IMG/VR virus record: IMGVR_UViG_3300037805_000644
Location: 1 to 64,000 of that record
Length of the DNA stretch: 64,000 bases
Reading direction: 5' to 3' (one strand)
Shown here piece by piece: positions 5,435-46,264 of the stretch (positions are counted from its first letter, which is position 1; each line of letters starts with the position of its first letter). Under the pieces are notes generated by a model. That model was not told where the DNA came from. It did not search any database and saw only the letters and a list, made by a program, of their open reading frames with translations. Position numbers and translations under genes: made by a program.

Positions 5435-5460
5435 CTACTACCGAGGAGCCCAGAGTTACC
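5435..5460 (-). promoter_or_regulatory. Recurrent promoter-like motif
   Basis: GGTAAC-N14-TAGTAG followed by GTGAGGTG and SD. Confidence 0.75.
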
Positions 5461-5476
5461 AGGGAAAAAGGTCCTT

Positions 5477-6202
5477 TCAGTCCCCTTTCCCGTCTTCCAC
5501 CCCCCTTCGATAAGACTTACGGACGTTGACACCGAGGGCTTTCCCTAGTTCAACTAGCCAGGGGGAGAGGGAGTCCCCGACGTACCCCGCATCGTAAGCC
5601 ATCATATCCAGGGCGACCTCTGCTGTCGTGGCCGAGTTCCCCTCTTGCTCCGACAAATGTTGGAGTCGACCCACAAGAGTTTGGGTACGCTCATCCTTGT
5701 AGTTGAGGTACCAGTGGCGGTGGTACGCAGCGACACGGTGCGGACACGACCCCCGAGACCGGACTGCCGATGCAACACGGGTAGCAGCCTCGACACCCCG
5801 GGGGTCATAGACCAGGGGGACCAGGGCCTTGCGCTGCTTGCGGACGGCTTCGGAGATGTCTCGGATGGCGTCACTGTCCTGGGCGTCTGTGACCAACACC
5901 ATGCACCTACGTGCCATCTCGGCCAGCTCATCGGGGATGGTGTAATACAGGCGGCTCACGTCAAGAGACTTGGCCTCCTCAGCGAAACCTTCGATGAGGA
6001 GGAGGTGCTTGCGGATGCAGTCGTCACAGTAATGGTGCTGGAGGTGGTCCTCCAGCAACAAGAGCTGCTTGGCGATCTCCCGGAGGTTGAACGCAGGGTG
6101 CATGAGCGTCATCCGCTCTCGGCTGGCCTGCTTGGTGCGGGCTGCCTGCCTTCGCCTGGTCTGGTGGGTTTGTAGCACGACGGGTCCTCCGGTTGGTATC
6201 AC
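5477..6202 (-). CDS. Hypothetical protein with FNLREIAKQ-LLEDHL-CxDCxxKH motif
   Basis: 241-aa ORF; conserved-looking His/Cys metal-binding motif. Confidence 0.65.
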   Translation of the reverse strand: MIPTGGPVVLQTHQTRRRQAARTKQASRERMTLMHPAFNLREIAKQLLLLEDHLQHHYCDDCIRKHLLLIEGFAEEAKSLDVSRLYYTIPDELAEMARRCMVLVTDAQDSDAIRDISEAVRKQRKALVPLVYDPRGVEAATRVASAVRSRGSCPHRVAAYHRHWYLNYKDERTQTLVGRLQHLSEQEGNSATTAEVALDMMAYDAGYVGDSLSPWLVELGKALGVNVRKSYRRGVEDGKGD

Positions 6203-6223
6203 CCTGGCCGGGTGATAGAAGAA

Positions 6224-6856
6224 TCACCGCTTGGGTGTGGGCAGGACCTTGGCCAGGGCGGCCTCATCCTCCTTGCGGATGTTGTCGTTGCCCTGCTCCA
6301 TCATGGCGAGGAGCCTTTTCTTGGTGGTGTCCAGGGACATGTTGCCCTGTGCCGTCATCTCTCCAGTATCCCGGTCCTGGCGACGGCTGGTGAGGCCCTT
6401 GGCACCAGGCTTGATGATCCTGACCAGCTCGGGGCTCATCGAATGCAGGGCGATATCCCACTGCCAATCTACAAAGGTACTCCCGTCAATCAGGATCGGC
6501 GGGGAGATGGCCTTCGTCTCCCGGAAAATGGTCATGCCTGCCCGAGTACGCAACTCCAGATCGAGGTAATGGAGATGCCGGATGATGGGAGACCCCAGGA
6601 AATCAAGGCGGAACCGGATACCGATCCGGTGGTCCCCCGCGATGATGTTCGGCTCGTTGAGTACGCCCCATTCGTGAGCAACAACCTCCAGGTCATCCGT
6701 CTCGATGAGACGCTGGATGACCTCCTGCTCGTCCTCCGACATGGGGACATACATCCCGTTGGGGTTCAAACCCCCGAAAGGGTTCAAGCCGTCAGGCCGT
6801 GCATTCGGGTTGTAGGCCCCGACCTGGGGGGTCCAGAGATTCTTTTTGACACTCAT
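6224..6856 (-). CDS. Hypothetical protein
   Basis: Long ORF; ATG at 6856 overlaps the upstream stop. Confidence 0.7.
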   Translation of the reverse strand: MSVKKNLWTPQVGAYNPNARPDGLNPFGGLNPNGMYVPMSEDEQEVIQRLIETDDLEVVAHEWGVLNEPNIIAGDHRIGIRFRLDFLGSPIIRHLHYLDLELRTRAGMTIFRETKAISPPILIDGSTFVDWQWDIALHSMSPELVRIIKPGAKGLTSRRQDRDTGEMTAQGNMSLDTTKKRLLAMMEQGNDNIRKEDEAALAKVLPTPKR

Positions 6857-7341
6857 CCGCACACCTTTACATGGCAAGCTCTGGGACGCCCTTGGCGGGT
6901 CCCGGCGAAGAACACGATGGTCTGACCCACGGTGGGGATTCGCCCTTCCAGGATTTCGGACTTGTGCAGGTGGTAGCTCAAGTCGTCGTCACCCTGAACG
7001 AACCCATATCCACGGTGGGCGTCGAACGTGTCCACCTTACCCTCAACGACTTTAATCATCCCGATGCGGGTCACCCTCTCCGCCCGAGGGGCCTTGTCTT
7101 TCCCCGCAGAGAGATCAACCTCGACCTCAACCAGCTCACCCAGGATGGGCGGCGGTGGGGCCTTGAGCCAAGAACAGCCGTCCGAGGAACAGAACAAGCA
7201 CCGCTTCTCAACGGGCTGGTGGCCAGGTCGGAAAGACCCCAGGTGGAAAAACACCTCCTGCTTGCTTTCGGGGTCTATGCAGAACCCAAACAGCTTGGAG
7301 GGGATGTATTTATGCACCCGCATTTTAACGGTGCTGATCAC
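6853..7341 (-). CDS. Tandem cold-shock-domain protein with Cys insert
   Basis: FGFC...EVFFH and GYGFV...YHLHKSEI RNP1/RNP2-like motifs. Confidence 0.85.
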   Translation of the reverse strand: MISTVKMRVHKYIPSKLFGFCIDPESKQEVFFHLGSFRPGHQPVEKRCLFCSSDGCSWLKAPPPPILGELVEVEVDLSAGKDKAPRAERVTRIGMIKVVEGKVDTFDAHRGYGFVQGDDDLSYHLHKSEILEGRIPTVGQTIVFFAGTRQGRPRACHVKVCG

Positions 7342-7349
7342 AGTGCTCC

Positions 7350-7790
7350 TCAGCTTCCTGCACGGGCGGCGATAATGGCGGCGATGACGTTTGGCTTGTT
7401 GCCCAGCTTGTCGGGGCGCTCAATGCCTGCGTCCATCGCCATCTCGTTCAGATCCCGACGAGACATGCCCATCTCAGGTTCGATGGCCTTGGGTTTCTTG
7501 GGCTTGGGCTTGGGCTTCTTCGGCTTCGCGGGCTCAGGCTCGGGCTCAACCTCGGGCTCAACCACGACAGGCTCAACCTCGGGCTCGGGCTCAACCTCGG
7601 GCTCAACCACGGGCTCAACCACGATGGGCTCAACCTCGGGCTCAATGGCGGCAAGGGCCTCCATTACGTTGGCGGGCTCAGGGGCGGGCAGGGGCGCCGG
7701 CGGTGAGGGCACCCGAGCTGTGCGCTTGGTCTGGTGATCCCTCTTGATCTTCCGCATACGGGCGAAAGGGGGCGGATACTGATTGGCCAT
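7350..7790 (-). CDS. Glu/Pro-repeat protein with C-terminal Rho_N/HeH-like domain
   Basis: (EPEV)n and KP repeats; MSRRDLNEMAMDAGI...NKPNVIAAI. Confidence 0.65.
   Translation of the reverse strand: MANQYPPPFARMRKIKRDHQTKRTARVPSPPAPLPAPEPANVMEALAAIEPEVEPIVVEPVVEPEVEPEPEVEPVVVEPEVEPEPEPAKPKKPKPKPKKPKAIEPEMGMSRRDLNEMAMDAGIERPDKLGNKPNVIAAIIAARAGS
7531..7644 (-). repeat. Imperfect coding repeat (VEPE)
   Basis: Repeated GTTGAGCCCGAG units. Confidence 0.8.
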
Positions 7791-7802
7791 GGTTTTCTCC
7801 GG

Positions 7803-8180
7803 TTAGGCGACAAGGCCCTTGATGAGGCCGCTAAGCACCTGTCCAAGGACGTGTCCGACCTTGACCATGAACTCATCGGCGGCTGATTTGCGGCTTGTTT
7901 CTGCGTTCTGTAGATGTGCCAGGATATCAGATCCTGTGGCGAGGTCTGCCCACTCGGGCACCCCACTCCCACCCCTGAGGAGGTCTCCGACGGCATCCAG
8001 GGCCATCTGGATGCCCTGGGGTCCGTAAGTCTCGACCCCGTTGGAAACCAAGGCCAGGATAGCTTTTTTCCAAGGCTCCGAAGACTCGGAGCCCATCTCG
8101 GCCAGCTCACCTGCGAGCTTCTTGACACCCAGCTCACCCAGAGCTGGCGCCAGGCTCTCCAACAGCTTGCTGAAATCCAT
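7803..8180 (-). CDS. Hypothetical helical protein
   Basis: GGAGG SD; TGATG coupling to the upstream gene. Confidence 0.7.
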   Translation of the reverse strand: MDFSKLLESLAPALGELGVKKLAGELAEMGSESSEPWKKAILALVSNGVETYGPQGIQMALDAVGDLLRGGSGVPEWADLATGSDILAHLQNAETSRKSAADEFMVKVGHVLGQVLSGLIKGLVA

Positions 8181-9774: not shown

Positions 9775-9832
9775 GCAGCTCCAGCCCTTAGGTTCCTAAC
9801 AGGCTGGGATATAGGTGGAAAAACGGCGGGGT

Positions 9833-10558
9833 TCAGTCGTCAGCCAGGAGTAAATCGATGTTTAGGTCATCAGCGAGATCCAGGCTCTCGGCCTGGGCCG
9901 CAAGGGCAGCCATCCTGCCCTTGCGCTTCTTAGGGGGCTCGGGGACAGGCTCGGGGATAGGCTCGGGGATAGGCTCGGGGATAGGCTCGGGGGTAGGCTC
10001 GGGGGTAGGCTCGGGGGTAGGCTCGGGCACCTCAAACGGGATGACCCGGGTGGGGCCCACTGCGACAGAGGTGCGGACCCTGCTGGGGTTGGACAGGGCC
10101 TCTGCCTTGTGGATGGCACCCTGAATCTTGGTCTTGCTCCGCCCGAAACGTGCAGGGTCAATGCCCAGCCCCACGGCTTGCTCTCGAAGCTCATTCAAGG
10201 TAGGTAGGCTTGATTTCCAGGACCGCCGGGCACCCCCTGTGGGTGTGGTGGACCCCCGGTAAATAACCACCAGCTCGATCTCACCGTCAGAGCGCACTTC
10301 AATGTGGGGCGCACCTCTCCGGCTGGCTTTCGCCATGGCGGCGTTAGCGGCGATGTCCGCTAGAGGACTAGACCCCAGGAGGGTGCAGGCTTCCTTTCGA
10401 GCTTTCTCAAGCTCCTCCTTGGCTACCTGGAGGCGCTGGTACACCGACCCCGCAAAGGTCTCCGACTGGGCGGACAACAACGACTCCGCCCAGGTGGCGT
10501 CCAAAGGTTCTCGGTGCTGCTTGCCGCTCATGCTGTCCCTCAGCTCGAAAGTTTCCAA
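9833..10558 (-). CDS. HeH/Rho_N-like domain protein with (PEPT/I) repeats
   Basis: PTLNELREQAVGLGID..GRSKTKIQGAI; repeat near the C-terminus. Confidence 0.65.
   Translation of the reverse strand: METFELRDSMSGKQHREPLDATWAESLLSAQSETFAGSVYQRLQVAKEELEKARKEACTLLGSSPLADIAANAAMAKASRRGAPHIEVRSDGEIELVVIYRGSTTPTGGARRSWKSSLPTLNELREQAVGLGIDPARFGRSKTKIQGAIHKAEALSNPSRVRTSVAVGPTRVIPFEVPEPTPEPTPEPTPEPIPEPIPEPIPEPVPEPPKKRKGRMAALAAQAESLDLADDLNIDLLLADD
9935..10027 (-). repeat. 12-bp coding tandem repeat (PEPT/PEPI)
   Basis: About 7-8 CCCGAGCCTA(C/T)C units. Confidence 0.85.
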
Positions 10559-10563
10559 CGTAT

Positions 10564-10590
10564 CTACCCCTTGGCCATCCGCACGTTACC
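10564..10590 (-). promoter_or_regulatory. Promoter motif variant
   Basis: GGTAAC-N15-GGGTAG just upstream of the 10558 start. Confidence 0.45.
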
Positions 10591-10650
10591 GCCCCAGAGC
10601 CTCTGAAACTTTCAGCGGGTCGAACTTTCGGAACCCACCCAAACTTTCAA

Positions 10651-10676
10651 GGTAACTTCCCTGCTCAGGGTAGTAG
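10651..10676 (+). promoter_or_regulatory. Recurrent promoter-like motif
   Basis: GGTAAC-N14-TAGTAG, then ATGAGGTGAG and SD. Confidence 0.75.
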
Positions 10677-10699
10677 ATGAGGTGAGCAAGGGAGGTTAC

Positions 10700-11137
10700 A
10701 TGAAAACCATGCCCATGTTCGATTGCCGGGTGTGGGTCGTGCCAAATCTCACCGAGGCGGCGAACTCCGTTCTCTGGCGAGTGCAAGATGCCATCCGCAA
10801 CAGCATCTCGATGGCGGCCCAAGCCCACTTCCCCCACCGCGAACTCCAGGGGCGGGATCAGGACACCATGCTGGCCATGCTGGCGGATAAGGGCGTCCAC
10901 TGGGACAAGTACCCTGATTTTTTCAAGTGGGGGTACTTGATCCGACGACACAAGGTGCTTCGTCCGTTCTCCCCCGGAGAAATCGAGGCCCTGCCGCCTC
11001 AGCATCACGCACGCCGGGACCCCTCTCTGGTCATTGAGCGGACGGAGGTGCAGGTGTTGCAGACCTGTTTCAAGTTCATCCAGAACCGTACCGAATTCAT
11101 GCTTGGGGCGGAACCTCAGCTTGAGGAGACACCATGA
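10700..11137 (+). CDS. C-terminal half of a Thg1-like (tRNA-His guanylyltransferase) protein
   Basis: FDCR..P...WRVQDAIRNSI...FPHRELQG...GVHW..YP.FFKWG; N-terminal catalytic half absent. Confidence 0.8.
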   Translation: MKTMPMFDCRVWVVPNLTEAANSVLWRVQDAIRNSISMAAQAHFPHRELQGRDQDTMLAMLADKGVHWDKYPDFFKWGYLIRRHKVLRPFSPGEIEALPPQHHARRDPSLVIERTEVQVLQTCFKFIQNRTEFMLGAEPQLEETP

Positions 11138-11850
11138 GCAAGAAAAAGCGGCCCGGTCAGAAAAACCGGGCTTTCATCGATATTGAGACAACGGGCCTAC
11201 ATCCCGATATCAATGAGATCATCTCTTTCGCGGGGCAGAAATACTCCCCTGAGGGGGTTCTGCTCGATGAGATCGAGTTCAAGATCAAGTTCCAGCACAC
11301 CGAGGAGCCCCCACCCAACGCGGAGCACATCTGGCCGGGACCCGACCCCTTCTCCCCTGAGAAATGGAAAGAAGGGGTGGACTTTTGTCTGGGGTTCAAC
11401 CATTACAGCGAGGAAGAGTGGGCAGATGCCTTGGTGCTCCTGGATGCTCTCCACTGCATTGCAGACTTTCTCAGGGGTTCGGTCATCGTGGGCCACAACC
11501 CTCACTTTGACCGGGAGTTCATCGCCACCAAAGCCAAGCGGCTCGGGTTGAAGGTGCATTTCCCGTACCACAAGATCGACACCGTCACGCTCGGTTATGA
11601 GCACCTGGCCCCCTTGGGGCTCCCTTACCTGTCGCTCTCAAAGCGGGGGGGCGTGTGTGACTTCTTGGGGATCCCCGTGGAGAAAGCGCATGAGGCCCTG
11701 GACGATGTGCGACGCACCGCCAAGGTGTTCTTCATGCTCGACAAGGCGACCTGGTTCGACCGACTGCGATGGCGGTTCAACTGGTGGTGGCGCCGCAATC
11801 TCAAGATTTCTGAGGTAACTGGATCCATCCCCGATAGTGGGGTAGCTTGA
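11134..11850 (+). CDS. DEDDh 3'-5' exonuclease (DnaQ-like)
   Basis: FIDIETTG, GHNPHFD, AHEALDD. Confidence 0.9.
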   Translation: MSKKKRPGQKNRAFIDIETTGLHPDINEIISFAGQKYSPEGVLLDEIEFKIKFQHTEEPPPNAEHIWPGPDPFSPEKWKEGVDFCLGFNHYSEEEWADALVLLDALHCIADFLRGSVIVGHNPHFDREFIATKAKRLGLKVHFPYHKIDTVTLGYEHLAPLGLPYLSLSKRGGVCDFLGIPVEKAHEALDDVRRTAKVFFMLDKATWFDRLRWRFNWWWRRNLKISEVTGSIPDSGVA

Positions 11851-11867
11851 TCTGCCCCTAATAGTAG
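11814..11867 (+). promoter_or_regulatory. Two tandem promoter motif variants
   Basis: GGTAAC-N15-TAGTGG and GGTAGC-N15-TAGTAG ahead of an AGGAGG SD. Confidence 0.5.
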
Positions 11868-12074: not shown

Positions 12075-12101
12075 GGTAATGAAACCCTCACCCGGTAGTA
12101 G
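12075..12101 (+). promoter_or_regulatory. Promoter motif variant
   Basis: GGTAAT-N15-TAGTAG. Confidence 0.55.
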
Positions 12102-12129: not shown

Positions 12130-12384
12130 ATGGTGAAGTCTGAAATTCTGGGTGTTGTCCTGACGGCTTTGTCGCCGTTGGCGCTCTTTGTGGCCGGGAT
12201 GGTCACATACGTGATCCCCGCCGATGCCCATCGGCTCAAGGTCCGGGTGTGCATGGAGGAGTTGCCCTCAGGGTTCCACTCTTACCGGGTGTGTCACAAC
12301 CGGCACATCGGAGAGGCAGGCGGCATTGTCGCCACCCTCACCCCCACCATCCCCGTTGAGTACGCCTATGAGGCCGCACGGTGA
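12130..12384 (+). CDS. Small membrane-anchored protein
   Basis: GAGGTG SD; N-terminal hydrophobic helix. Confidence 0.55.
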   Translation: MVKSEILGVVLTALSPLALFVAGMVTYVIPADAHRLKVRVCMEELPSGFHSYRVCHNRHIGEAGGIVATLTPTIPVEYAYEAAR

Positions 12385-21893: not shown

Positions 21894-21969
21894 TACCCGT
21901 TGAAGAGGGGAGAGTGGGGTGAGGGATACCCATTGAAGAGGGGAGAGTGGGGGGGGTTACCCGTTGAAG
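21894..21969 (+). repeat. 31-33 bp direct repeats
   Basis: TACCC(G/A)TTGAAGAGGGGAGAGTGGGG at 21894 and 21927, partial copy at 21958. Confidence 0.8.
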
Positions 21970-22823: not shown

Positions 22824-22871
22824 GGTAACTCCAGCATTTTTTTTTGGGGGGGGGTTGATCCCCTCCATGCC

Positions 22872-23753
22872 TTAACTACTATGTGGTGGGCTACCGTTAC
22901 CTCTTTTATCTGGCCCCATGAACATTTCGCAGAATTCAGGGATAGCGATCCTCATCCTTTTTCGGGCAATCTCCAGGTATTTCGGGGAGATATCCACACC
23001 TAAGAAGTCTCTGAGGTTATTGCCGGCAGCAACGCCTGTGGTGCCACTGCCACAGAAAGGGTCAAGAACCAGATCACCCTCTTTGGTGAACAGCTTAACG
23101 AAAAAATCAGGAAGGGCCACTGGGAATGCGGCTGGGTGTCCTAGATTTCGGGTCTCCGTCGGGAGGTGCAGGACATTGCTCGGGAAAACCATTTTCCGGT
23201 CTTTCCAAACCCCCGTGTTTTTCGTGTACCCTGAACCCGTCCCAGACATCACCTGACCAACGCTCTCCCCTTGTGTCCAATCTCCCACCGGAACACGGAC
23301 ATTATCCTGGTACATCAAGAACTTGCGGTTCTTGTTAAACTGTAGGATCCGTTCCCAAGAATCCCTGAAACGATTAGGCCATTTACCCGGTGTGGTGTTC
23401 TTTTTGTGCCAGATGAATTCCTCAGTCCAAATCCACCCCTGAGAGCGCATCGCCTGGATCAAATCCAGAACGTAGGTATGCCGCTCCCCGCGATGCACAT
23501 GCTCCTTGATGTTCACAAGCAGGGTGCCCGAGTCCTCCAACACCCTGTAAAGTTCCAAGGAGACATCCCTCCACCACTCCACGTAATCGTTTGCAGGGAT
23601 GCCCCCGTAAGTGGCTTTCCGCTGAGTTGCATAGGGAGGTGAGGTGAAGATAAGCTGGACACTCCCACTCTCAAGCCCTCCCAACGCCAGGGGCACAGCC
23701 CCTTCAATCAAATCCCACTCAACCACGCTTGTCTCCTTCGGAGTTAGCCGCAT
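22872..23753 (-). CDS. Complete beta-class N4/N6 DNA methyltransferase
   Basis: FTSPPY catalytic motif, HPAAFP, VLDPFCGSGTT SAM-binding motif. Confidence 0.92.
   Translation of the reverse strand: MRLTPKETSVVEWDLIEGAVPLALGGLESGSVQLIFTSPPYATQRKATYGGIPANDYVEWWRDVSLELYRVLEDSGTLLVNIKEHVHRGERHTYVLDLIQAMRSQGWIWTEEFIWHKKNTTPGKWPNRFRDSWERILQFNKNRKFLMYQDNVRVPVGDWTQGESVGQVMSGTGSGYTKNTGVWKDRKMVFPSNVLHLPTETRNLGHPAAFPVALPDFFVKLFTKEGDLVLDPFCGSGTTGVAAGNNLRDFLGVDISPKYLEIARKRMRIAIPEFCEMFMGPDKRGNGSPPHSS
22876..22901 (-). promoter_or_regulatory. Recurrent promoter-like motif
   Basis: GGTAAC-N14-TAGTAG. Confidence 0.7.
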
Positions 23754-25271: not shown

Positions 25272-25298
25272 CTACTCAAAACAGGGGTGAGTGTTACC
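25272..25298 (-). promoter_or_regulatory. Promoter motif variant
   Basis: GGTAAC-N15-GAGTAG. Confidence 0.55.
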
Positions 25299-36572: not shown

Positions 36573-36603
36573 GGGGTCCTTTCGGGGTTCTCTCTCACCT
36601 CAC

Positions 36604-36629
36604 CTACTACCGAGACGTGAGGGGTTACC
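36604..36629 (-). promoter_or_regulatory. Recurrent promoter-like motif
   Basis: GGTAAC-N14-TAGTAG GTGAGGTG. Confidence 0.75.
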
Positions 36630-36634
36630 CCTTT

Positions 36635-37612: not shown

Positions 37613-37640
37613 GGGGGGTAAGCTGGTGTGCGGTCAAGTC

Positions 37641-37664
37641 AAAGTTTCAAAGTTTCAAAGTTTG
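37641..37664 (+). repeat. 8-bp direct repeat x3
   Basis: AAAGTTTC AAAGTTTC AAAGTTTG upstream of the sigma-like gene. Confidence 0.75.
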
Positions 37665-37666
37665 AT

Positions 37667-37942
37667 TTACAGGGGCTCGGTCGAGGCGCACTTGGTACAA
37701 AGGGGTCCCTGAGCAGCCTCAAAATACACACACCGGGAGCACAGTCGGGGCACCTGGCCCCCCAGCTCGGTTTCGGCGTCCTTGCGCTGTTTCTCAAGAG
37801 AGGCCAGAAGCTCGTCCCCTCCTCCGCAGCACCAGTCACACCCGCTCAACTCCCGGTGCAGCTCCGCGATACCTCGAACCGCTTTCAGGTACTTGCGGAG
37901 GTTCGTCATCTGAGCTGGCATTTTCAGTTGTTCCCCGTCCAA
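37667..37942 (-). CDS. Small Zn-finger protein
   Basis: CDWCCGGG, CSRC, CTKC. Confidence 0.6.
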   Translation of the reverse strand: MDGEQLKMPAQMTNLRKYLKAVRGIAELHRELSGCDWCCGGGDELLASLEKQRKDAETELGGQVPRLCSRCVYFEAAQGPLCTKCASTEPL

Positions 37943-38298
37943 CGGTTGTGGGGGTTGCTCGTGAACCCCCGGACATCATGCTCGAAATCCCGACGAGCGA
38001 GGGTGAACCCCCAGCTTTCCAGCATCGCCTTGACCTCAGAGAGCAGGCAGCCCATTCGGAAATACACACACTGGAGTTCCTGGTGGGTGAACTCCTCCCG
38101 AGTTTCGGCGATGAGTTCCGCCGCGAAAGTGTCCACACTCTTGTATTCAGGATCGTAAGGGTCAAGATATCCGAAACGCCAGTCCGATTCCCGCTCGGGA
38201 ACCGCCTCCTGTTTGCGAACAGCTCTCTTGTCCGCTTTGCGGGCAATCTTGTCATCCTCACGCCCCTGGTCAAACGGGATATATCCGACGCGGGCCAT
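37924..38298 (-). CDS. Hypothetical protein
   Basis: AGGAG SD; VRGFTSNPHNRW. Confidence 0.7.
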   Translation of the reverse strand: MARVGYIPFDQGREDDKIARKADKRAVRKQEAVPERESDWRFGYLDPYDPEYKSVDTFAAELIAETREEFTHQELQCVYFRMGCLLSEVKAMLESWGFTLARRDFEHDVRGFTSNPHNRWTGNN

Positions 38299-38357
38299 GG
38301 GTGGTTCTCCTGGTTTGTTCTCACTGAGGGGCGCGGGTGCGGTTCAAAACTTCGGCA

Positions 38358-38489
38358 CTAGCCCTTGAGGCCGTCGGTGTACCCCTTGACGTACCAACGG
38401 TAATCCTCGGAGCCGGGCGAGTAAGGGTTGGTGGAGGGGCGGCCGGACTTGGCGTCCTTGTAACCTTTTTCCCAGGCAGTACGGATCAT
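38358..38489 (-). CDS. 43-aa Rmf-like protein (absent from ORF track)
   Basis: MIRTAWEKGYKDAKSGRPSTNPYSPGSEDYRWYVKGYTDGLKG; AAGGAG SD, ATGA overlap. Confidence 0.65.
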   Translation of the reverse strand: MIRTAWEKGYKDAKSGRPSTNPYSPGSEDYRWYVKGYTDGLKG

Positions 38490-38776
38490 GATGTCTCCTT
38501 GAGGGCTTTCACAGCCGCCAGCATCTTTCGGGCAGTCTGTGCGAGGGTCTGTGCAGGGTTGTCCGAATCCAGGATCATTTCAAGGGCAGCATCGCTGCCG
38601 TCGTAATAAAGCGATCCGACGGAATCCTTGTAGACGAAATCCTTGTAGACGACGGTCCACTCCTCACAGCGTATGTTGATCAGGCCCGGGGGTGCTGAGA
38701 CCGCCGGACGTTCGGTTACCCAGGGTCCCGGGATGCCCGCCTCAGCCAGGATGCGTTCGATATCAGCGCGGTCCAC
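38486..38776 (-). CDS. Hypothetical protein
   Basis: Overlapping operon packing. Confidence 0.55.
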   Translation of the reverse strand: MDRADIERILAEAGIPGPWVTERPAVSAPPGLINIRCEEWTVVYKDFVYKDSVGSLYYDGSDAALEMILDSDNPAQTLAQTARKMLAAVKALKETS

Positions 38777-38993
38777 CAGCCTTGTCCACGTCGTCGAGCC
38801 AGCGGGACAGGGAAAGGTCGTTACCGACGACCCAGCCTCTGCTTGTCTTGATGGCGTGTTCTTGGGTCCAGGCAGGCTTACTGCCTTTCCGGGTCCAGAT
38901 GTTGGCAGGTGCCGGCATGAAAATGGTGGCGATGGTCCGTTTCAGGGACAACATAACGGTGATGTCCCCGTAAGTCTGGCTGAGCAGGAGCAT
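38763..38993 (-). CDS. Hypothetical protein
   Basis: TGATG coupling. Confidence 0.5.
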   Translation of the reverse strand: MLLLSQTYGDITVMLSLKRTIATIFMPAPANIWTRKGSKPAWTQEHAIKTSRGWVVGNDLSLSRWLDDVDKAGGPR

Positions 38994-39244
38994 CAGGCGC
39001 CCCCTGCCACGATGGTGAGGAGGGTGCCGCTGATTCGGGTGTCCTCACCACAGGTGAAGCTGATGTCCTCGACAGCAAAACCAGCGACCCCGTTGATGGA
39101 GCCCGGAGCGCGCCGGAGGGGGCCCTTCACCACAGCCGTGAGACCCGTGCTGAGCGGGTTGGGGCCCTCGATGTTGATGGACAGGACTACGACCTCCCCA
39201 CAAAGAGCATCAAGATGGTCGAAAGTGGCGCGTTCCATGGGCAT
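38993..39244 (-). CDS. Hypothetical protein
   Basis: GAGGAGGT SD downstream of the promoter motif. Confidence 0.65.
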   Translation of the reverse strand: MPMERATFDHLDALCGEVVVLSINIEGPNPLSTGLTAVVKGPLRRAPGSINGVAGFAVEDISFTCGEDTRISGTLLTIVAGGA

Positions 39245-39268
39245 CGGTTACCTCCTCGTTCACCCCAC

Positions 39269-39294
39269 CTACTATCAAGGTGGCGAAAGTTACC
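39269..39294 (-). promoter_or_regulatory. Recurrent promoter-like motif
   Basis: GGTAAC-N14-TAGTAG. Confidence 0.75.
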
Positions 39295-39584
39295 TAGTTT
39301 TTCAGATTGTGCGACGGAGGGGCGTGCTTGAGGTGAAGGGCGCTGCCCACAGGCAGAACCATCGTGCAGTGCTGGGCCGCTGCCCGCATCCAGAAGACGG
39401 TGTGACCGCCTTCCTCAGGGCGAGTGCTCTTCACCCGCCCGAGCATCGGCTTGAGGGTGCGCCGCAAGAATTTCTTCACGTCCTCACTGGAGGTGATGTC
39501 CCCCTCGAACTCGAAAGGGCCGCTGGTGTCCGCCTCAGGGTTTTGGCTGACGCGGTGAATGTGTCGAAGATAAACCTGGGTCAT
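39294..39584 (-). CDS. Hypothetical protein
   Basis: Start reassigned to MTQVYL. Confidence 0.55.
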   Translation of the reverse strand: MTQVYLRHIHRVSQNPEADTSGPFEFEGDITSSEDVKKFLRRTLKPMLGRVKSTRPEEGGHTVFWMRAAAQHCTMVLPVGSALHLKHAPPSHNLKN

Positions 39585-39619
39585 ATCATTCTCGCTTTGC
39601 TTGTGATTGGAGGGTAACC

Positions 39620-39943
39620 TCAGCCTTGAGTGCTCTCGGCCGTGCGAGCCTTGCGGAAAGTCACGGTGGCGGTGTACAGGACAGCTCGCTGTTCGCGGGT
39701 CAGGGGGTACAGGAGGCCGGCGCGGGAGACTCGGCGGTAATCCGCCCAGCAAGTCACCCCCTTGCGGACCATGAGCGCATCATCCTGCCCGACCAGGGCT
39801 CGGAGGTTGTTGGCGGTGCAGTTGGGGATTTCACCTTTCCCGACCATGCCTCGGAGGGTCCGCACCGCCACATCGTTGAGTTCTCCGATGGTCTGGGCAT
39901 CGTTTGCGGCGTCGGCGGCGAGGGCCATCTCGTAAGGCTTCAT
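39620..39943 (-). CDS. Hypothetical protein
   Basis: GGGAG SD downstream of the promoter motif. Confidence 0.65.
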   Translation of the reverse strand: MKPYEMALAADAANDAQTIGELNDVAVRTLRGMVGKGEIPNCTANNLRALVGQDDALMVRKGVTCWADYRRVSRAGLLYPLTREQRAVLYTATVTFRKARTAESTQG

Positions 39944-39970
39944 GGTTTCTCCCTTTGTGTCTCACCTCCC

Positions 39971-39996
39971 CTACTACCGAGGAGGCGGGAGTTACC
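39971..39996 (-). promoter_or_regulatory. Recurrent promoter-like motif
   Basis: GGTAAC-N14-TAGTAG. Confidence 0.75.
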
Positions 39997-40615
39997 CTCT
40001 TTTCTTGAGTGAGTTCGAGATATCCCGCTCCAAGGCGATCTGAGCCCGCACGACATCATCGTCCAGTTTGTTGGTGGACTGAGGGTGGGTGCCGACGGTG
40101 GATTCGATGATCTCCCCATCTGCATACTGGGTCTCGAAGTGTGTGCAGAGTTTATCCCTCTCCACCCGAATGATCGCCCAGAAGAGCCCTAGCACCTGTG
40201 CCTTATACTGCACCTGTGCGTCTTTGGTGATGTCATACTTCCAGCAGTAACGCGTGCTCGCCGTCAGCGCCCCTTCGCCCATGAAGGTTTCGGCAGCAGC
40301 CACCAGCAGACCAGATATCGTTCTGCTGTGGACGCGGGTGCCGAGGATGAGGAGGGTGTAGGTGGTGTGACCACTGTGTGACAGCTCACTCGTGACGTGC
40401 AAGGCGTGGACGCCCACGCCTTTCTTGGCAGCAGGGACCCAAGCCTCTTTATCGGACTCAGCCTCATCCTCGGGTCGGTGGAACACCACCGGGAACCAGC
40501 CCTTGTCCAGCCCCAGCTCGCGGGCCAGTGCCAAGGATTTCTTCTGTGCGTCACGCTCGGTTCGGGTGACAGTGCCGAGGCTGAGGTACCGGCCACCGAG
40601 ATCTTCGATGCTCAT
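39992..40615 (-). CDS. Hypothetical protein
   Basis: AAGGA SD before MSIEDL. Confidence 0.65.
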   Translation of the reverse strand: MSIEDLGGRYLSLGTVTRTERDAQKKSLALARELGLDKGWFPVVFHRPEDEAESDKEAWVPAAKKGVGVHALHVTSELSHSGHTTYTLLILGTRVHSRTISGLLVAAAETFMGEGALTASTRYCWKYDITKDAQVQYKAQVLGLFWAIIRVERDKLCTHFETQYADGEIIESTVGTHPQSTNKLDDDVVRAQIALERDISNSLKKRG

Positions 40616-40654
40616 GGTGATTTCCTTTGGCAGAGTAAGGGGCAGCCCCAAGCC

Positions 40655-40897
40655 CTAACGGACGCTGAGGTAGTAGCCCTGGTAGGTTTCGGAGTACCCG
40701 ATGTTGACGTTCTTGCCCTCGCGGTAATTGTAATGTGCCTTGAGCTGAGCCCACTCGGTAGAGAACACGGCAACCCAGCCCCCGCCCTTGGCCTCTTCGT
40801 ACCCCACAGCGTGGATGACGTGCCCGTCAGTCTCAGAGACCTGTTTGTTCAACGTGGCGGTGATCTTGCGCTCGAACTCGGGGGTGTTCAGATCCAT
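40655..40897 (-). CDS. Hypothetical protein
   Basis: AAGGA SD downstream of the promoter motif. Confidence 0.65.
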   Translation of the reverse strand: MDLNTPEFERKITATLNKQVSETDGHVIHAVGYEEAKGGGWVAVFSTEWAQLKAHYNYREGKNVNIGYSETYQGYYLSVR

Positions 40898-40933
40898 GGG
40901 ACTTCCTTTCGCGGGGGTTCTCTCTCACCTCCC

Positions 40934-40959
40934 CTACTACCGAGATCCCTGGAGTTACC
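40934..40959 (-). promoter_or_regulatory. Recurrent promoter-like motif
   Basis: GGTAAC-N14-TAGTAG. Confidence 0.75.
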
Positions 40960-41069
40960 CCTTTTTTGTCTTTCTCAGGTAACCCCGCAAGGTGTACCAG
41001 GGGCCCGGCAGGTACTCATTGGAGAACCCCAGCGAGTGCGCCTGGTGGTTGTCTACGCGAAGCCGGGGG

Positions 41070-41669
41070 TCAGAGCACAGAGCTGAGCAAGGGCTGCATC
41101 AGGTCTGGATTCTTGAACCAGCCGGGCTCGGTGACAACGGCCCCTTGGAGTGCCTGGTAAATGTAAACGAGGGTCTTTCCCTCTAGCCCATCGTGCCTCT
41201 TGAGGATGCGGGCCATTGGCCTCTTGTGCCTCTCTGCTGCCTTCATCAGGTCTGCCTTGAGACCCGCCACCAAAACGCCCTGTGCCCAGAGGGACATTCG
41301 AGAAATCACCTGGTCTACCTGATCCTCCAGCTCTGCGGGGATCTTCTGAAACCCGAGGTTGTAAGCGGGAACTCGGTCCGACCGGACCATCAGGTCTCTG
41401 GCCAAGATGAGCGCACGCCGGGCAGTCCCGGACAGGTTCCAGGTCCGGGACTGCTCCACTAGCACCCAGAACACGTATTGCAACGACTCGGGCGGTAGCC
41501 CTGCCTTATTGGATTCCGTGATGACCTGATGTCCGAAATCCTTGCCCTTGCCAAGGGCTGCGGTCTCCCACTCGGAGAGGATCTTCTGGAGGATTTCGTT
41601 CTCGGGTGCCCCAGAGGAATGCGGCTGGCCTGAGATGTTCTCCCAAAACCGGGTCAGGAAATTACTCAT
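41070..41669 (-). CDS. Hypothetical protein
   Basis: ATGA overlap; 199 aa. Confidence 0.65.
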   Translation of the reverse strand: MSNFLTRFWENISGQPHSSGAPENEILQKILSEWETAALGKGKDFGHQVITESNKAGLPPESLQYVFWVLVEQSRTWNLSGTARRALILARDLMVRSDRVPAYNLGFQKIPAELEDQVDQVISRMSLWAQGVLVAGLKADLMKAAERHKRPMARILKRHDGLEGKTLVYIYQALQGAVVTEPGWFKNPDLMQPLLSSVL

Positions 41670-43743: not shown

Positions 43744-44559
43744 CTAGCTTCCCAACTTTCCGCTCCCTGGGGCAGAGATCAGGTCCAGGATGTTGAAGCC
43801 CGGCTCCGTCCGTACTTTCCGGGGCTCTAGGGCCTTGGGCTTCTCGGGTTCGATCTCAGGTTCGATCTCAGGTTCGATCTCAGGTTCGATCTCGGGTTCG
43901 ATCTCGGGTTCGATCTCGGGTTCGATCTCGGGTTCGATCTCGGGTTCGATCTCGGGTTCGATCTCGGGTTCGATCTCGGGTTCGATCTCGGGTTCGATCT
44001 CGGGTTCGATCTCTCGATGCGCCTCATGGATATGCCCAAGGGGGACCAGGTAAGCTCTCGCCTCCGGTGCCCACTGGGGGTTATCCATCAGGAGGTGCCC
44101 GGGGACCGCCTGTTCGACCACCCGGGTTGTGGACCCCCCGCCAGGGGCCCAGAACTGAACGACATCACCTGGCCGAATGTCCTGAGCATCACCGAAATTG
44201 GGGTTGCCTCCAGGGGACTCCCAGAACCGGTAAATTTTCTTGAACTTGCTGGGCGTCTCCACAACAGGGACTGCCCGACTGGCCCGGGGTAAGGGTGGGT
44301 CCACAGCATCAACGGGTGCTTCCTGCGCAAGAGCAACCAACTTGCCATCGATCTGCTTGAACCAACCCGCCTCAGTCCCAATCCGCAAGACCTCAACCCA
44401 CTTTTTCTCTCCGATCCGGCGCCACCCCAGGTGACCCTTTGCCAGTGCTTTTGCCCAGGGCAAGGGTCGGGGCTTTCGCACAGTGGGGGTCTTAGCAAAG
44501 CGGGACTCGTCCAGCCCCTCAAAGACGGCCCGCGCCGCTGCTTGAAGATCCTCAGCCAT
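43744..44559 (-). CDS. Hypothetical protein with (EPEI)n repeat
   Basis: 271-aa ORF. Confidence 0.7.
43843..44010 (-). repeat. 12-bp tandem repeat x14
   Basis: ATCGAACC(C/T)GAG units encoding IEPE. Confidence 0.95.
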
Positions 44560-45099
44560 TTAGATACCTCGAATGGTGACCTGGTGGGAGCGGGCCAGCC
44601 TCTGGGCCTCCGCCTGATTTGCTGTGCCTACAGAAGCACCCGCAGCATCAAACACTTGGTAGGTGCCGTCTGGTTGAACCTGCATGGTTGCGGCTCCTGC
44701 GAAAGGTTGGGGGTTGGGGGACGGGGCACCCAGGAGCAAGGTGAGCTGTTGCGGGGCCAGTACAGCGACAGGGTTGAGGGCTGCCTCGATCTCCGCAGTC
44801 GTCGGGATCTGGCCCAAGGTGCTGAACAGGTCCAGGACCACCTTGCGGATTTTCCGCCATGCACAGGGGAGTTCACTCCACATGCACAGATCGATCAGGG
44901 TCTCCGCTTCGGTGATGAAGTCCTGGAAAGCCTTGACCACGAACCGAGAGCCGGTTCTGTCGGTCACCAGGATCTCAACGGGTTGGTGTGGGGACCGCCC
45001 CGTTGCCTCCCAGCTCTCGGCACCCAGGCCCAGCTTGATCGTCCAGGACTTGTCCTGACCAGACATCCGGTTCACGTCTTGAATAGTATTGGTTCTCAA
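44560..45099 (-). CDS. Hypothetical protein
   Basis: TTG start with GGAGG SD. Confidence 0.65.
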   Translation of the reverse strand: MRTNTIQDVNRMSGQDKSWTIKLGLGAESWEATGRSPHQPVEILVTDRTGSRFVVKAFQDFITEAETLIDLCMWSELPCAWRKIRKVVLDLFSTLGQIPTTAEIEAALNPVAVLAPQQLTLLLGAPSPNPQPFAGAATMQVQPDGTYQVFDAAGASVGTANQAEAQRLARSHQVTIRGI

Positions 45100-45115
45100 G
45101 ATTCCTCCACCTTCC

Positions 45116-45142
45116 CTACTCGCCTGAGGGTGGGGTGTTACC
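45116..45142 (-). promoter_or_regulatory. Promoter motif variant
   Basis: GGTAAC-N15-GAGTAG. Confidence 0.55.
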
Positions 45143-45358
45143 CGTCCTGGGGATCTCGGCGGTTTTGTTTTCGCTGAAAAGGCACCCCTGACATACCCGA
45201 AAAGGGCTCTTTTCGGGTTGGCTAAAGCTCCAGGTGGCCCAGCCTGTGAACCAGTGGCCGCCGCTCTTTTTGCAGAGTGTTACAGAGCGGGGGTCCGCCG
45301 GAGGCCAGTGCCCAACGGCTTGTCGAACTGCCCCCCACGGATCAGCCGTTTTCATCAT
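45116..45358 (-). CDS. Small Cys/His protein
   Basis: ATGA overlap; C..GH..CxxC. Confidence 0.45.
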   Translation of the reverse strand: MMKTADPWGAVRQAVGHWPPADPRSVTLCKKSGGHWFTGWATWSFSQPEKSPFRVCQGCLFSENKTAEIPRTGNTPPSGE

Positions 45359-45582
45359 GCCCGCCCCTGCACCTGGGTGACCTTGTCGAGAACGAGGTCC
45401 ACATGAAAGACAGCCTTTGCCGTCCCGGTGAGGGGGTTGGCCATCCAAGAGATGATGTGGTCGCCGCCGTGAAAGCCGCTCCACCGGAACCCCTTGGAGA
45501 GCATATCCCGCTGCTCATGACCTAGCTCATTGGCGACCAACGCGAGGGCTCGGATTTTGAGAGTCATGCTGATGGGGCTCAT
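45355..45582 (-). CDS. Small hypothetical protein
   Basis: GAGGA SD. Confidence 0.6.
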   Translation of the reverse strand: MSPISMTLKIRALALVANELGHEQRDMLSKGFRWSGFHGGDHIISWMANPLTGTAKAVFHVDLVLDKVTQVQGRA

Positions 45583-45615
45583 GCTGTCCTCGTTTCGTTT
45601 CGTTTCTCACCCCAC

Positions 45616-45641
45616 CTACTACCGGGAACGGGCCTTTGCAG
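45616..45641 (-). promoter_or_regulatory. Partial promoter motif
   Basis: CGGTAGTAGGTGGGGTGAG matches the consensus, but the upstream box is CTGCAA. Confidence 0.45.
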
Positions 45642-45838
45642 GGTGGTTCCACATTAACACGACCTGCCTCTCTGAGGAGACGGGTGACGCAGTGCGCCCC
45701 ATCTCCACGATGGTCATGCAGGAGTTCACCGACCGATCCATCCTCTCAGGGTTCCTCCCGGGGACCGCTGCTGCGGCCCGCGCAGACGAGGAATTCGGCC
45801 CGGGGATCGATCTCGCCTGCGATGGGCGGTGGGTGGGG

Positions 45839-45967
45839 ATGCCTCGTGTGGAACAAGCCTTCAACCTGGGTTACGCGGATGCCTATGAGGGCATTGATGA
45901 GCCGTGCCGAGGGTTTGAGGTTGAGTACGGCCGTGGTCAGCGTGAGTACCAAGAATCCCTGAGCTGA
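45839..45967 (+). CDS. Small Rmf-like peptide (start uncertain)
   Basis: AFNLGYADAYEG...EYGRG. Confidence 0.35.
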   Translation: MPRVEQAFNLGYADAYEGIDEPCRGFEVEYGRGQREYQESLS

Positions 45968-45976
45968 ACAAAACCA

Positions 45977-46213
45977 GTGGAGAACATGATGGCCGAAAAC
46001 ACCACCCCTCTCACTTACCACGTCCGCTCTTATGTCCAGCTCGCCCGACACTTGGGCCGCAAGCCCGAGGGGATGGTCATAGAGGGGTTCCGGCACATCG
46101 GTGTGCTCTGCGTACCCGACGGTGAGGCCCAGAAAGTCCTTCACCGCGTCAAGCACCCCGATGGTCGGGAGTGGCTGATCGATCTGAAACTCAAAACCAC
46201 CAAACTCACCTGA
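45977..46213 (+). CDS. Small hypothetical protein
   Basis: GGAG SD before ATG 45986. Confidence 0.55.
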   Translation: MENMMAENTTPLTYHVRSYVQLARHLGRKPEGMVIEGFRHIGVLCVPDGEAQKVLHRVKHPDGREWLIDLKLKTTKLT

Positions 46214-46237
46214 GACCCCGAAAACCTCAATTTTGGA

Positions 46238-46264
46238 GGTAACGATCCGGGGGGTCCCTAGTAG
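46238..46264 (+). promoter_or_regulatory. Recurrent promoter-like motif
   Basis: GGTAAC-N15-TAGTAG GTGAGGTG. Confidence 0.7.

What the first reader, a model, noticed from the sequence alone, without database searches (positions are those of the whole stretch)
5435..46264. Recurrent bipartite promoter GGTAAC-N14/15-TAGTAG
Seen: exact copies at 5435, 10651, 22876, 36604, 39269, 39971, 40934 (N14) and 46238 (N15). Variants lie at 10564, 11814, 11841, 12075, 21844, 25272, 45116 and 45616. All are oriented toward a nearby start codon, often followed by GTGAGGTG. I saw none before the large virion genes. Inference: an early/middle regulon read by an ECF-type sigma rather than sigma70.
Basis: partly seen in the sequence, partly recalled or inferred. 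Interest (0 to 1): 0.62.

Follow-up and report, generated by a model that had tools for sequence, protein, structure and literature searches.

The report
Huge-phage early/middle promoter regulon
A 26-base two-part signal (GGTAAC, 14-15 bases, then AGTAG) sits just upstream of about twenty non-virion genes of an uncultivated marine huge phage and is almost certainly a phage-specific promoter, probably read by a sigma factor that the phage lineage encodes itself.

Summary
All 8 exact copies lie at the stated coordinates, with 0 expected by chance. The 223-kb record (a fragment of a huge phage from seawater) holds 15 exact copies, or 20 if the second box is relaxed to NAGTAG. With spacers of 11-19 allowed, only 14 or 15 occur. 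Nineteen of the 20 point at a ribosome-binding site and start codon 16-52 nt downstream.

The genes served are replication or nucleotide-metabolism genes and small ORFans. Virion genes carry a different motif, CCTATA(N)CC.

The closest relative, a 402-kb genome at 64% mean protein identity, has 56 copies at the same spacing. Five of them sit at orthologous positions, where only GGTAAC, AGTAG and a GA(A/G)C 8 nt further on are conserved. This fits a -35-like box, a -10-like box and a start site.

That relative encodes a divergent ECF-type sigma inside its promoter-dense block. The window's record lacks that block. A co-occurring 47.6-kb contig from the same seawater runs carries the sigma orthologue and 12 promoters with this phage's own TAGTAGGTGAGGTGA signature.

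I rate "promoter" as near certain and "early/middle regulon" as supported. "Read by an ECF-type sigma" is plausible (about 0.5) but untested, because no RNA data exist. This is a new member of a known kind; interest is moderate.

The parts
3142..3168 (-). Class-I promoter variant GGTAAC-N15-GAGTAG, upstream of the 694-aa gene 1034-3118.
   Evidence: RBS and ATG lie 23 nt after the second box. GAGTAG is the commonest second box in relative G001.
5435..5460 (-). Class-I promoter, exact, N14, followed by GTGAGGTGAAC. Upstream of a small ORF and of the 140-aa ORF / thymidine kinase (intein-containing) genes.
   Evidence: 50.0 bits; start codon 23 nt downstream.
10561..10590 (-). Related site GGTAAC-N18-TAGATA, upstream of gene 9833-10531. 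The spacing differs; possibly another promoter class sharing the upstream box.
   Evidence: A similar GGTAAC-N17-TAGATA occurs in relative L041.
10651..10676 (+). Class-I promoter, exact, N14. Upstream of 10700-11137 and of the RNase T-like exonuclease 11134-11850.
   Evidence: (44.5 bits). Orthologous site in G001 at 183180.
11814..11867 (+). Two overlapping weak variants (GGTAAC-N15-TAGTGG and GGTAGC-N15-TAGTAG) before a 60-aa ORF.
   Evidence: (13.1 bits). Weak; function uncertain.
12075..12101 (+). Class-I promoter variant GGTAAT-N15-TAGTAG, upstream of 12130-12384.
   Evidence: 35.8 bits.
22876..22901 (-). Class-I promoter, exact, N14, lacking the GTGAGGTGA tail. Heads the operon 21957-22868, then the primase-like Zn-ribbon gene, then DNA polymerase A.
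   Evidence: (29.7 bits).
25272..25298 (-). GGTAAC-N15-GAGTAG variant with no clear downstream gene.
   Evidence: no RBS and start within 80 nt.
36604..36629 (-). Class-I promoter, exact, N14. Heads the 366-aa gene, then SNF2 helicase, then the 356-aa gene, then DnaB.
   Evidence: 50.8 bits; ATG 31 nt downstream.
39269..39294 (-). Class-I promoter, exact, N14, upstream of the 83-aa ORFan 38993-39244.
   Evidence: 49.3 bits.
39971..39996 (-). Class-I promoter, exact, N14, upstream of the 107-aa ORFan 39620-39943.
   Evidence: 51.0 bits.
40934..40959 (-). Class-I promoter, exact, N14, upstream of the 80-aa ORFan 40655-40897.
   Evidence: 51.2 bits.
45116..45142 (-). Class-I variant GGTAAC-N15-GAGTAG, upstream of 44560-45099.
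   Evidence: Orthologous site in G001 at 220884.
45616..45640 (-). Variant with the second box and downstream part (cggTAGTAGgtggggtga) but no GGTAAC. Upstream of the 75-aa gene 45355-45582.
   Evidence: (downstream block 29.1 bits, upstream block -15.5).
46238..46264 (+). Class-I promoter, exact, N15, upstream of 46288-46668.
   Evidence: 45.1 bits. Orthologous site in G001 at 220998.

Best explanation
The motif is the promoter of the non-virion (early/middle) genes of an uncultivated marine huge phage.

Anatomy, shown by the sequence: an A/T-rich tract; a -35-like box GGTAAC; a spacer of 14 bases (less often 15); a -10-like box NAGTAG (TAGTAG in this phage); 7 bases; then GA(A/G)C. A ribosome-binding site and start codon follow about 10-30 nt later.

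Mechanism, inferred: the phage has no RNA polymerase of its own and uses the host core enzyme. A phage-encoded divergent ECF-type sigma is made first from a different promoter. Its region 4 binds GGTAAC and its region 2 binds AGTAG. Transcription starts at the G or A of GA(A/G)C, about 8 nt after the second box, giving short leaders.

The sigma gene lies in the early block that is missing from this 223-kb record. It is present in the closest relative and on a co-occurring contig that carries this phage's own promoter signature. Virion genes are served by a separate CCTATA(N)CC promoter class.

That this is a phage-specific promoter class is close to certain. That the ECF-type sigma is its reader is the likeliest assignment, at about 0.5.
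For: - The motif is far above chance.
- Only spacers of 14 or 15 occur among 11-19 allowed, in two genomes: 20 of 20 sites here and 56 of 60 in G001.
- Nineteen of 20 sites are co-oriented with an RBS and start codon 16-52 nt downstream.
- A/T content upstream of GGTAAC is 0.62, against 0.42 for intergenic DNA.
- The genes served are non-structural. Virion genes carry CCTATA(N)CC instead.
- Relative G001 (402 kb, terminal repeats; collinear with this record over 174-378 kb at 64% mean identity) has 56 sites against 0 in the reversed control, 52 of them intergenic.
- At five orthologous positions, only the two boxes and GA(A/G)C at +8..+11 are conserved.
- No RNA polymerase genes are found here or in a 485-kb relative.
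- G001 encodes a 373-aa protein whose residues 203-368 match the sigma70-ECF model from region 2 to region 4 (E 1e-10, 41-42 bits; PF07638 21.0 bits). It lies inside the promoter-dense 77-86 kb block.
- This sigma family has 597 or more homologues, which JGI names sigma24. It is present in all three relatives' records that are at least 90% complete.
- Contig L183 has the orthologue (71% identity) plus 12 sites in 20.6 kb with this phage's TAGTAGGTGAGGTGA signature.
- Five 30-nt flanks seen in the seawater runs that hold the window match L183 exactly.
- The sigma gene itself has no class-I promoter upstream, as the first step of a cascade requires.
Against: - No transcript data exist, so neither the start site nor promoter activity is shown.
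- No sigma with region 2 lies in the 223-kb record. The link to L183 rests on co-occurrence and a shared signature, not on an assembled join.
- The sigma scores marginally below the curated cut-offs (41.0 against 42.9 bits; 21.0 against 21.1).
- AGTAG does not resemble the usual ECF -10 (CGT/GTC), and AAC-N14-NAGTAG is 1-2 bp shorter than the usual ECF spacing.
- If nearly all promoters of the 'early' block need a phage sigma, the very first transcription must come from few other promoters, and I did not identify these securely.
- More distant relatives that keep the sigma show no AGTAG motif near it, so I could not show co-variation between sigma and promoter.
- Gene calls come from my own simple script.
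Confidence: 0.6

Rival explanations
1. The sites are immediate-early promoters read directly by the unknown host's primary sigma holoenzyme. On this reading GGTAAC is the -35 box and the -10 hexamer is TAGGTG, 17 bp downstream, overlapping TAGTAG. No phage factor is needed.
For: - Read as GGTAAC-N17-TAGGTG, the geometry is the classical 17 bp.
- Sites with GGTAAC-N17/18-TAGATA exist here and in L041.
- The A/T-rich upstream tract looks like an UP element.
- Many downstream genes are small ORFans typical of early genes.
- The phage has no polymerase of its own.
Against: - In relative G001 the bases after AGTAG are not conserved, so TAGGTG is not a shared hexamer. The conserved element is NAGTAG.
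- Neither reading has the T at -7 or a TTG at -35 (established sigma70 consensus).
- The same AGTAG box, with lineage-specific upstream boxes, recurs in relatives of 58-65% G+C from seawater, groundwater and other sites. This is easier to explain by a phage-borne reader.
- The host is unknown, so its consensus could not be checked.
Confidence: 0.2
2. The reader is the clade-conserved 209-aa protein with two sigma region-4-like helix-turn-helix domains (record 208354-208983, minus strand). It would act as an activator or sigma-appropriation factor. One HTH would bind the lineage-specific upstream box and the invariant HTH would bind AGTAG as duplex DNA. This is akin in logic to T4 MotA at middle promoters, where a box closer than -35 replaces the -35 contact.
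For: - It is the only sigma-related gene in the record.
- It has 721 homologues at about 60% identity, always next to a clamp-loader-like gene.
- The AlphaFold model (pLDDT 82) shows two region-4-like domains, and only region-4 structures match it.
- The recognition helix of HTH2 is invariant (SQGLVRHRF), as is AGTAG.
- The helix of HTH1 varies. It reads PTVHYRL in this phage and its two closest relatives, which use GGTAAC, and PTVCYRL in the others.
- The 14-bp spacing is shorter than a sigma70 spacer.
Against: - It has no region 2, so it cannot melt a -10 box by itself.
- It lies among late or virion-side genes next to a clamp loader. By analogy with T4 late transcription, that suggests a late role, possibly at the CCTATA class.
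- The model is compact, which makes spanning two boxes 20 bp apart doubtful.
- L051's genome has the C variant but yet another upstream box, so the co-variation is not one-to-one.
- No MotA homologue is present.
Confidence: 0.15
3. The element is not a promoter. It could instead be an operator for a repressor, a conserved 5'-leader RNA element (the GAGGTGA part is complementary to the 16S rRNA 3' end), or a dispersed mobile repeat.
For: - GAGGTGA is Shine-Dalgarno-like and lies 15-30 nt before the real RBS.
- The copies in this phage are alike over about 45 nt, as recent repeats would be.
Against: - The GTGAGGTGA tail is not conserved in G001.
- The distance to the start codon varies (16-52 nt), while the inner spacing is fixed.
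- The two boxes are not palindromic.
- Sites are kept at orthologous positions while their flanks have diverged.
- There are no target-site duplications or terminal inverted repeats. This is by eye on the aligned copies; I did not run the repeat finder.
Confidence: 0.05

Closest known systems
ECF (group 4) sigma-dependent promoters, e.g. E. coli sigmaE GGAACTT-N16-TCTGA, B. subtilis sigmaW TGAAAC-N16-CGTA and sigmaX TGTAAC-N17-CGAC (consensus sequences quoted from memory)
   Same: Bipartite and strictly spaced. The upstream box ends in AAC (GGTAAC here; CAGAAC in relatives L033/L035). The match to TTGACA/TATAAT is poor. A small regulon is served by a dedicated sigma of region 2 plus region 4 architecture, and such a sigma is encoded by the lineage.
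   Different: The second box is AGTAG, not CGT/GTC-like. The spacer is 14-15. The sigma carries a roughly 170-200-aa N-terminal extension, scores just under the family cut-offs, and shows no class-I promoter upstream of its own gene (ECF sigmas are usually autoregulated). No anti-sigma was identified.
Phage-encoded sigma cascades: B. subtilis phage SPO1 gp28 and gp33/34, T4 gp55, phiEco32 gp36 (an ECF-like sigma) (from memory)
   Same: A phage without its own polymerase redirects host core enzyme to phage-specific promoter classes. There are separate classes for non-structural and virion genes.
   Different: The promoter sequences are unrelated. Here the promoter is bipartite with a -35-like box, whereas T4 late promoters (and, as I recall, phiEco32 promoters) are single -10-type elements. 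The organism is uncultivated and the temporal order is only inferred.
T4 middle promoters (MotA box at -30 plus a sigma70 -10 box, with AsiA)
   Same: The upstream box is closer to the -10-like box than a normal -35. The genes served are replication and nucleotide-metabolism genes.
   Different: No MotA homologue is present. The second box is not TAnnnT.

Membership tests
Bacterial bipartite (-35/-10) sigma70-family promoter | Two conserved boxes at a constrained spacing | tested here: met
   Only spacers of 14 or 15 occur among 11-19 allowed: 20 of 20 sites here and 56 of 60 in G001.
Bacterial bipartite (-35/-10) sigma70-family promoter | Located upstream of, and co-oriented with, genes, in non-coding DNA | tested here: met
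   Nineteen of 20 sites have an RBS and start codon 16-52 nt downstream; 18 of 20 are intergenic. In G001, 52 of 56 are intergenic.
Bacterial bipartite (-35/-10) sigma70-family promoter | Transcripts start 5-9 nt downstream of the -10 box | not testable with these tools
   No RNA run holds this DNA. The only indirect evidence is a conserved GA(A/G)C 8 nt after AGTAG in two genomes.
Primary-sigma (sigma70/sigmaA) promoter | Match to TTGACA-N17-TATAAT, above all A at -11 and T at -7 | tested here: not met
   GGTAAC matches TTGACA at 1 of 6 positions (3 of 6 if shifted). TAGTAG matches TATAAT at 3 of 6 and lacks the final T. The spacer is 14-15.
ECF sigma promoter | -35 box with an AAC core | tested here: met
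   GGTAAC is invariant in 20 sites here and 56 in G001. Relatives L033/L035 have CAGAAC at the same spacing.
ECF sigma promoter | -10 box of CGT/GTC type, 16-17 bp after the AAC | tested here: not met
   The second box is NAGTAG, 14-15 bp after the AAC. A GTA triplet lies 16-17 bp after it, so the geometry alone is not excluded.
ECF sigma promoter | A cognate sigma with regions 2 and 4 only is encoded by the same genome | tested here: inconclusive
   None is found in the 223-kb record. One is present in G001 (TIGR02937 41-42 bits against a cut-off of 42.9, covering region 2 to region 4) and on the co-occurring contig L183.
ECF sigma promoter | The sigma gene is autoregulated from its own promoter type | tested here: not met
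   No class-I site lies upstream of the sigma gene in G001 or L183. GAAACTTT-type repeats lie there instead.
T4-type middle promoter (MotA/AsiA) | A MotA-family activator is encoded | tested here: not met
   PF09114 gives no match at E<=10 in the record. AsiA was not tested.

The most novel reading that the evidence does not exclude
This huge-phage lineage may run a three-step transcription cascade on host core polymerase, using two unusual specificity factors.

1. An ECF-like sigma with a long N-terminal extension would read GGTAAC-N14/15-AGTAG.
2. A protein made only of two sigma region-4 domains, with no region 2, always sits beside a clamp-loader gene. It would drive the CCTATA(N)CC virion-gene promoters in a replication-coupled way. 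That would be a new kind of late-transcription factor.
3. Class-I promoters placed antisense inside the sigma gene would give negative feedback on the sigma.
Probability: 0.15. Interest if true: 0.75.

Novelty: new member of a known kind. Interest (0 to 1): 0.5.

Why it matters
Huge phages of 400-600 kb are known almost only from metagenomes, and how they time their gene expression is unknown. This work gives the following for one widespread lineage found in seawater, groundwater and other sites:
- a concrete promoter consensus;
- a map of which genes belong to the non-virion class and which to the virion class;
- two candidate phage-encoded specificity factors that can be expressed and tested without culturing the phage.

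The promoter/sigma pair could also serve as an orthogonal expression part. The promoter signature also proved useful as a barcode: it tied a separate 47.6-kb contig to this incomplete genome.

Tried and rejected
- Near-identical phage records: none found.
- Exact extended motif in IMG/VR and in metagenome contigs: none, or only single chance hits. The own record and near-identical records may have been left out of these scans.
- LR745208.1 (485 kb; DNA polymerase 50% identical): no GGTAAC..TAGTAG and no enrichment of KAGTAGG. It is too distant to help.
- Literature: no paper on this motif or clade was found. The 'moraphage' paper (PMC12619734) concerns another lineage.
- Host identification: one homologue is labelled a Planctomycetota MAG, but its 2.6-kb contig has phage synteny, so the label is probably a binning artefact. 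Cluster look-ups gave no organism names. The host stays unknown.
- RNA evidence: no RNA run holds the DNA. Contigs cannot show transcript starts.
- Strain variation at the sites: no differences were listed, so there is no test of selection.
- Co-variation of sigma helices with upstream boxes: five more distant genomes that keep the ECF-like sigma showed no AGTAG motif and no clear dyad near it with my crude search. The H/C difference in the tandem region-4 protein is suggestive only.
- The idea that GAGGTGA is a functional 5' Shine-Dalgarno-like RNA element: rejected, because the tail is not conserved in G001.
- A leaderless GTG start at gtgagGTG: rejected, because it is in frame with the gene in only some sites and every gene has its own RBS and ATG.

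Full report
**Observation.** The window is the first 64 kb of a 222,939-b IMG/VR virus record. The record has 61% G+C, is linear, and is rated 42% complete by CheckV. The whole record holds 15 exact copies.

Relaxing the first base of the second box and allowing any spacer from 11 to 19 gives 20 sites, every one with a spacer of 14 (14 sites) or 15 (6 sites). The reversed pattern gives one. A two-block weight matrix finds 22 sites of 10 bits or more, against 0-1 in simulated genomes.

**Anatomy.** Aligned copies read: A/T-rich tract, GGTAAC-tct-N-cTcGG-TAGTAG-gTgAGGTGA-(a/g)c.
- The 12 bases just upstream of GGTAAC are 62% A+T, against 42% for intergenic DNA.
- Nineteen of 20 sites are followed on the same strand by a Shine-Dalgarno sequence and a start codon 16-52 nt after the second box.
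- Eighteen lie in non-coding DNA by my own gene calls, and two overlap the last codons of the upstream gene.
- The inner spacing is therefore fixed while the distance to the gene varies. This is what a promoter shows, and not what a translational operator shows.

**Which genes.** Downstream genes are small ORFans and replication or nucleotide-metabolism genes:
- an RNase T-like exonuclease;
- the operon of a 366-aa protein, SNF2 helicase and DnaB;
- the operon leading to a primase-like zinc-ribbon protein and DNA polymerase A;
- an HA-domain helicase;
- a CCA/poly(A)-polymerase-head protein;
- the region of an intein-bearing thymidine kinase.

The long minus-strand blocks hold baseplate and tail genes (50-123 kb) and the protease, portal and terminase (182-200 kb). 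They have no such site. About a dozen of those genes have CCTATA(N)CC 33-57 nt before the start codon instead. This motif is kept at orthologous places in two relatives. I take it for a separate, probably late, promoter class.

**Relatives.** No near-identical phage is on record.
- Relatives found through the SNF2 helicase (about 50% identity) each carry their own bipartite signal ending in AGTAG(G/A): GGGCTCA-N18-TAGTAGG (L033, L035, L048), GGGCTAA-N15-GAGTAGG (L034), CCAGTTC-N16-GAGTAGA (L051). That is 18 sites in 234 kb against 0.8 in shuffles. The upstream words were read from the same data, so this count is partly post hoc.
- A closer relative (L041, helicase 75% identical) uses GGTAAC-N14/15-(C/A)AGTAGG.
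- The decisive case is G001, a 402,383-b IMG/VR genome with terminal repeats. It has 56 GGTAAC-N14/15-NAGTAG sites and none in the reversed control. Fifty-two are intergenic, with spacer 14 in 35 and 15 in 21.

The window's record is collinear with G001 174,475-377,737: 135 of 202 genes match, at 64% mean identity. Five sites are at orthologous positions: 10651/183180, 46238/220998, 146810/307286, 153127/314509 and 45116/220884. There the flanks and spacers have diverged, while GGTAAC, AGTAG and a GA(A/G)C at +8 to +11 after AGTAG remain.

In G001 the first base of the second box is G, A or C, and T only once. The GTGAGGTGA tail is absent there. So TAGTAG and the tail are peculiarities of this phage. 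The conserved GA(A/G)C is best read as the start site.

**The missing part.** Forty-eight of G001's 56 sites lie in 9-163 kb, a block with no counterpart in the window's record. I laid the contigs of the seawater runs that hold the window on 36401-41100. Further contigs aligned only to the promoter segment, and their flanks are absent from the record.

**Who reads it.** The record has no RNA polymerase genes, no MotA and no sigma region 2. A 485-kb relative also lacks the beta-prime domain. Host core enzyme must therefore be used. Two phage candidates emerged.

(a) G001 encodes a 373-aa protein (85015-86136, minus strand). Its residues 203-368 match the sigma70-ECF model from region 2 through region 4: E 1e-10, 41-42 bits against a cut-off of 42.9, and PF07638 21.0 against 21.1. 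It lies in the middle of the densest promoter block. The family has about 600 homologues, several named sigma24 by JGI. It is present in all three relatives' records that are at least 90% complete.

The orthologue at 71% identity lies on a 47.6-kb JGI contig (L183). That contig has 12 class-I sites in 20.6 kb, with this phage's own TAGTAGGTGAGGTGA signature. Five 30-nt flanks seen in runs X1 and X2 match L183 exactly, and L183 shares nothing else with the record. L183 is thus most likely the missing early region of this same phage.

In both genomes the sigma gene has no class-I site upstream. It has GAAACTTT-type repeats there instead, and a class-I site antisense inside its reading frame.

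(b) The record encodes a 209-aa protein (208354-208983, minus strand) made of two sigma region-4-like helix-turn-helix domains and a conserved C-terminal helix. It has more than 700 homologues at about 60% identity, always beside a clamp-loader-like gene. It lacks region 2. Its neighbourhood suggests a late, replication-coupled role.

**Mechanism and rivals.** The best-supported reading is a sigma cascade. The ECF-like sigma is made first and directs host core polymerase to GGTAAC/AGTAG promoters of non-virion genes, and virion genes use CCTATA(N)CC.
- Shown: the motif, its geometry, its placement, its conservation, and the existence and location of the sigma gene in the lineage.
- Inferred: that the sites fire, where they start, and which factor reads them.

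The rivals are direct reading by the host primary sigma (0.2), reading through the tandem region-4 protein (0.15), and a non-promoter element (0.05). I rejected the idea that GAGGTGA is a functional Shine-Dalgarno-like RNA signal, because the relative lacks it.

**Comparison with known systems.** The signal works like an ECF-type promoter (AAC-ended upstream box, strict spacing, dedicated sigma) and like the phage sigma cascades of SPO1, T4 and phiEco32. It fails two ECF membership features: a CGT/GTC-type second box and autoregulation. A third, a cognate sigma in the same genome, is only indirectly met. It clearly fails the primary-sigma consensus.

**Novelty.** I call it a new member of a known kind, a phage-specific promoter regulon with a probable phage sigma, in a lineage where nothing was known. 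It is not a new principle.

**Limits.**
- Gene calls come from a simple self-trained script.
- The host is unknown.
- No expression data exist.
- Attempts to show co-variation between sigma residues and promoter boxes in more distant genomes gave nothing.
- Only genetic code 11 was used.

Noticed in passing
window 9809-9814(-) and 63264-63269(-). Elsewhere in the record: 81246, 87931, 123201, 141171, 150450, 163678, 165152, 168447, 185613, 195783, 204533 (all minus strand).: A second recurrent motif, (g/c)CCTATA(N)CC, lies 33-57 nt upstream of start codons, mostly of tail, baseplate, head and other large minus-strand genes. It is kept at orthologous places in relatives (L031, L052). It is probably the late promoter class.
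   Followed up: partly
G000 record 208354-208983(-) (L026:8354-8983), outside the window: A 209-aa protein made of two sigma region-4-like HTH domains and a C-terminal helix (NLNILREV), with no region 2. It has more than 700 homologues at about 60% identity in huge-phage contigs, always next to a DNA_pol3_delta2 clamp-loader-like gene and a 181-aa gene. LR745208.1 has two paralogues. One 2.6-kb contig with this synteny is labelled a Planctomycetota MAG, probably mis-binned.
   Followed up: partly
window 788-905. Also 10549-10646 and 37642-37663. L183:9251-9466. G001 86172-86343.: There are clusters of (GGAG)AAGTTTGG / GAAACTTTC repeats. Seven lie within about 120 nt after a bidirectional terminator hairpin (733-768) between convergent genes. 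Three lie in the divergent region 10532-10699. Three tandem copies lie before gene 36635-37573. Seven lie directly upstream of the ECF-like sigma gene on L183. They may be operators, iterons or early-promoter elements.
   Followed up: partly
window 3444-5048(-): The thymidine kinase gene is interrupted by an intein (Hint domain plus LAGLIDADG homing endonuclease). Relatives carry inteins in their SNF2 helicase and DnaB genes.
   Followed up: no
window 22837-22854(-): A homopolymer tract C9A9 lies 21 nt downstream of the 22876 promoter's second box. It sits in the first codons of the ORF if that ORF starts at 22868 (MEGINPPPKKN) and upstream of the alternative start at 22823. It is a possible slippage site.
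   Followed up: no
G001 81,899-82,842 (L167:1899-2842): In the 402-kb relative there is an ORF-free array of about five 126-bp units. Each unit holds a back-to-back pair of class-I promoters separated by the 12-nt TCGAAAATTGGG. Neighbouring units face each other about 60 nt apart. This could encode small sense/antisense RNAs, act as a factor sink, or be an origin-like region.
   Followed up: no
L183:9862(-). G001 85669(+) and 85744(+).: Class-I promoter sites lie antisense inside the 5' half of the ECF-like sigma reading frame in both genomes, pointing back towards the sigma gene's upstream region. This could give negative feedback, or the site could be the promoter of the next divergent operon.
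   Followed up: no
whole record against G001; L183: The record is a fragment collinear with G001 174-378 kb. The roughly 170-kb early block of G001 has no counterpart in it. Contig Ga0427877_000315 (L183) co-occurs in the same runs and carries the same promoter signature, so it is probably part of the missing block.
   Followed up: yes
L006 (LR745208.1 292,674-292,707): A 27-bp unit, CTGTCCCAAACGAGTAGGCAGCCCGAC, is repeated in tandem in the distant 485-kb relative.
   Followed up: no
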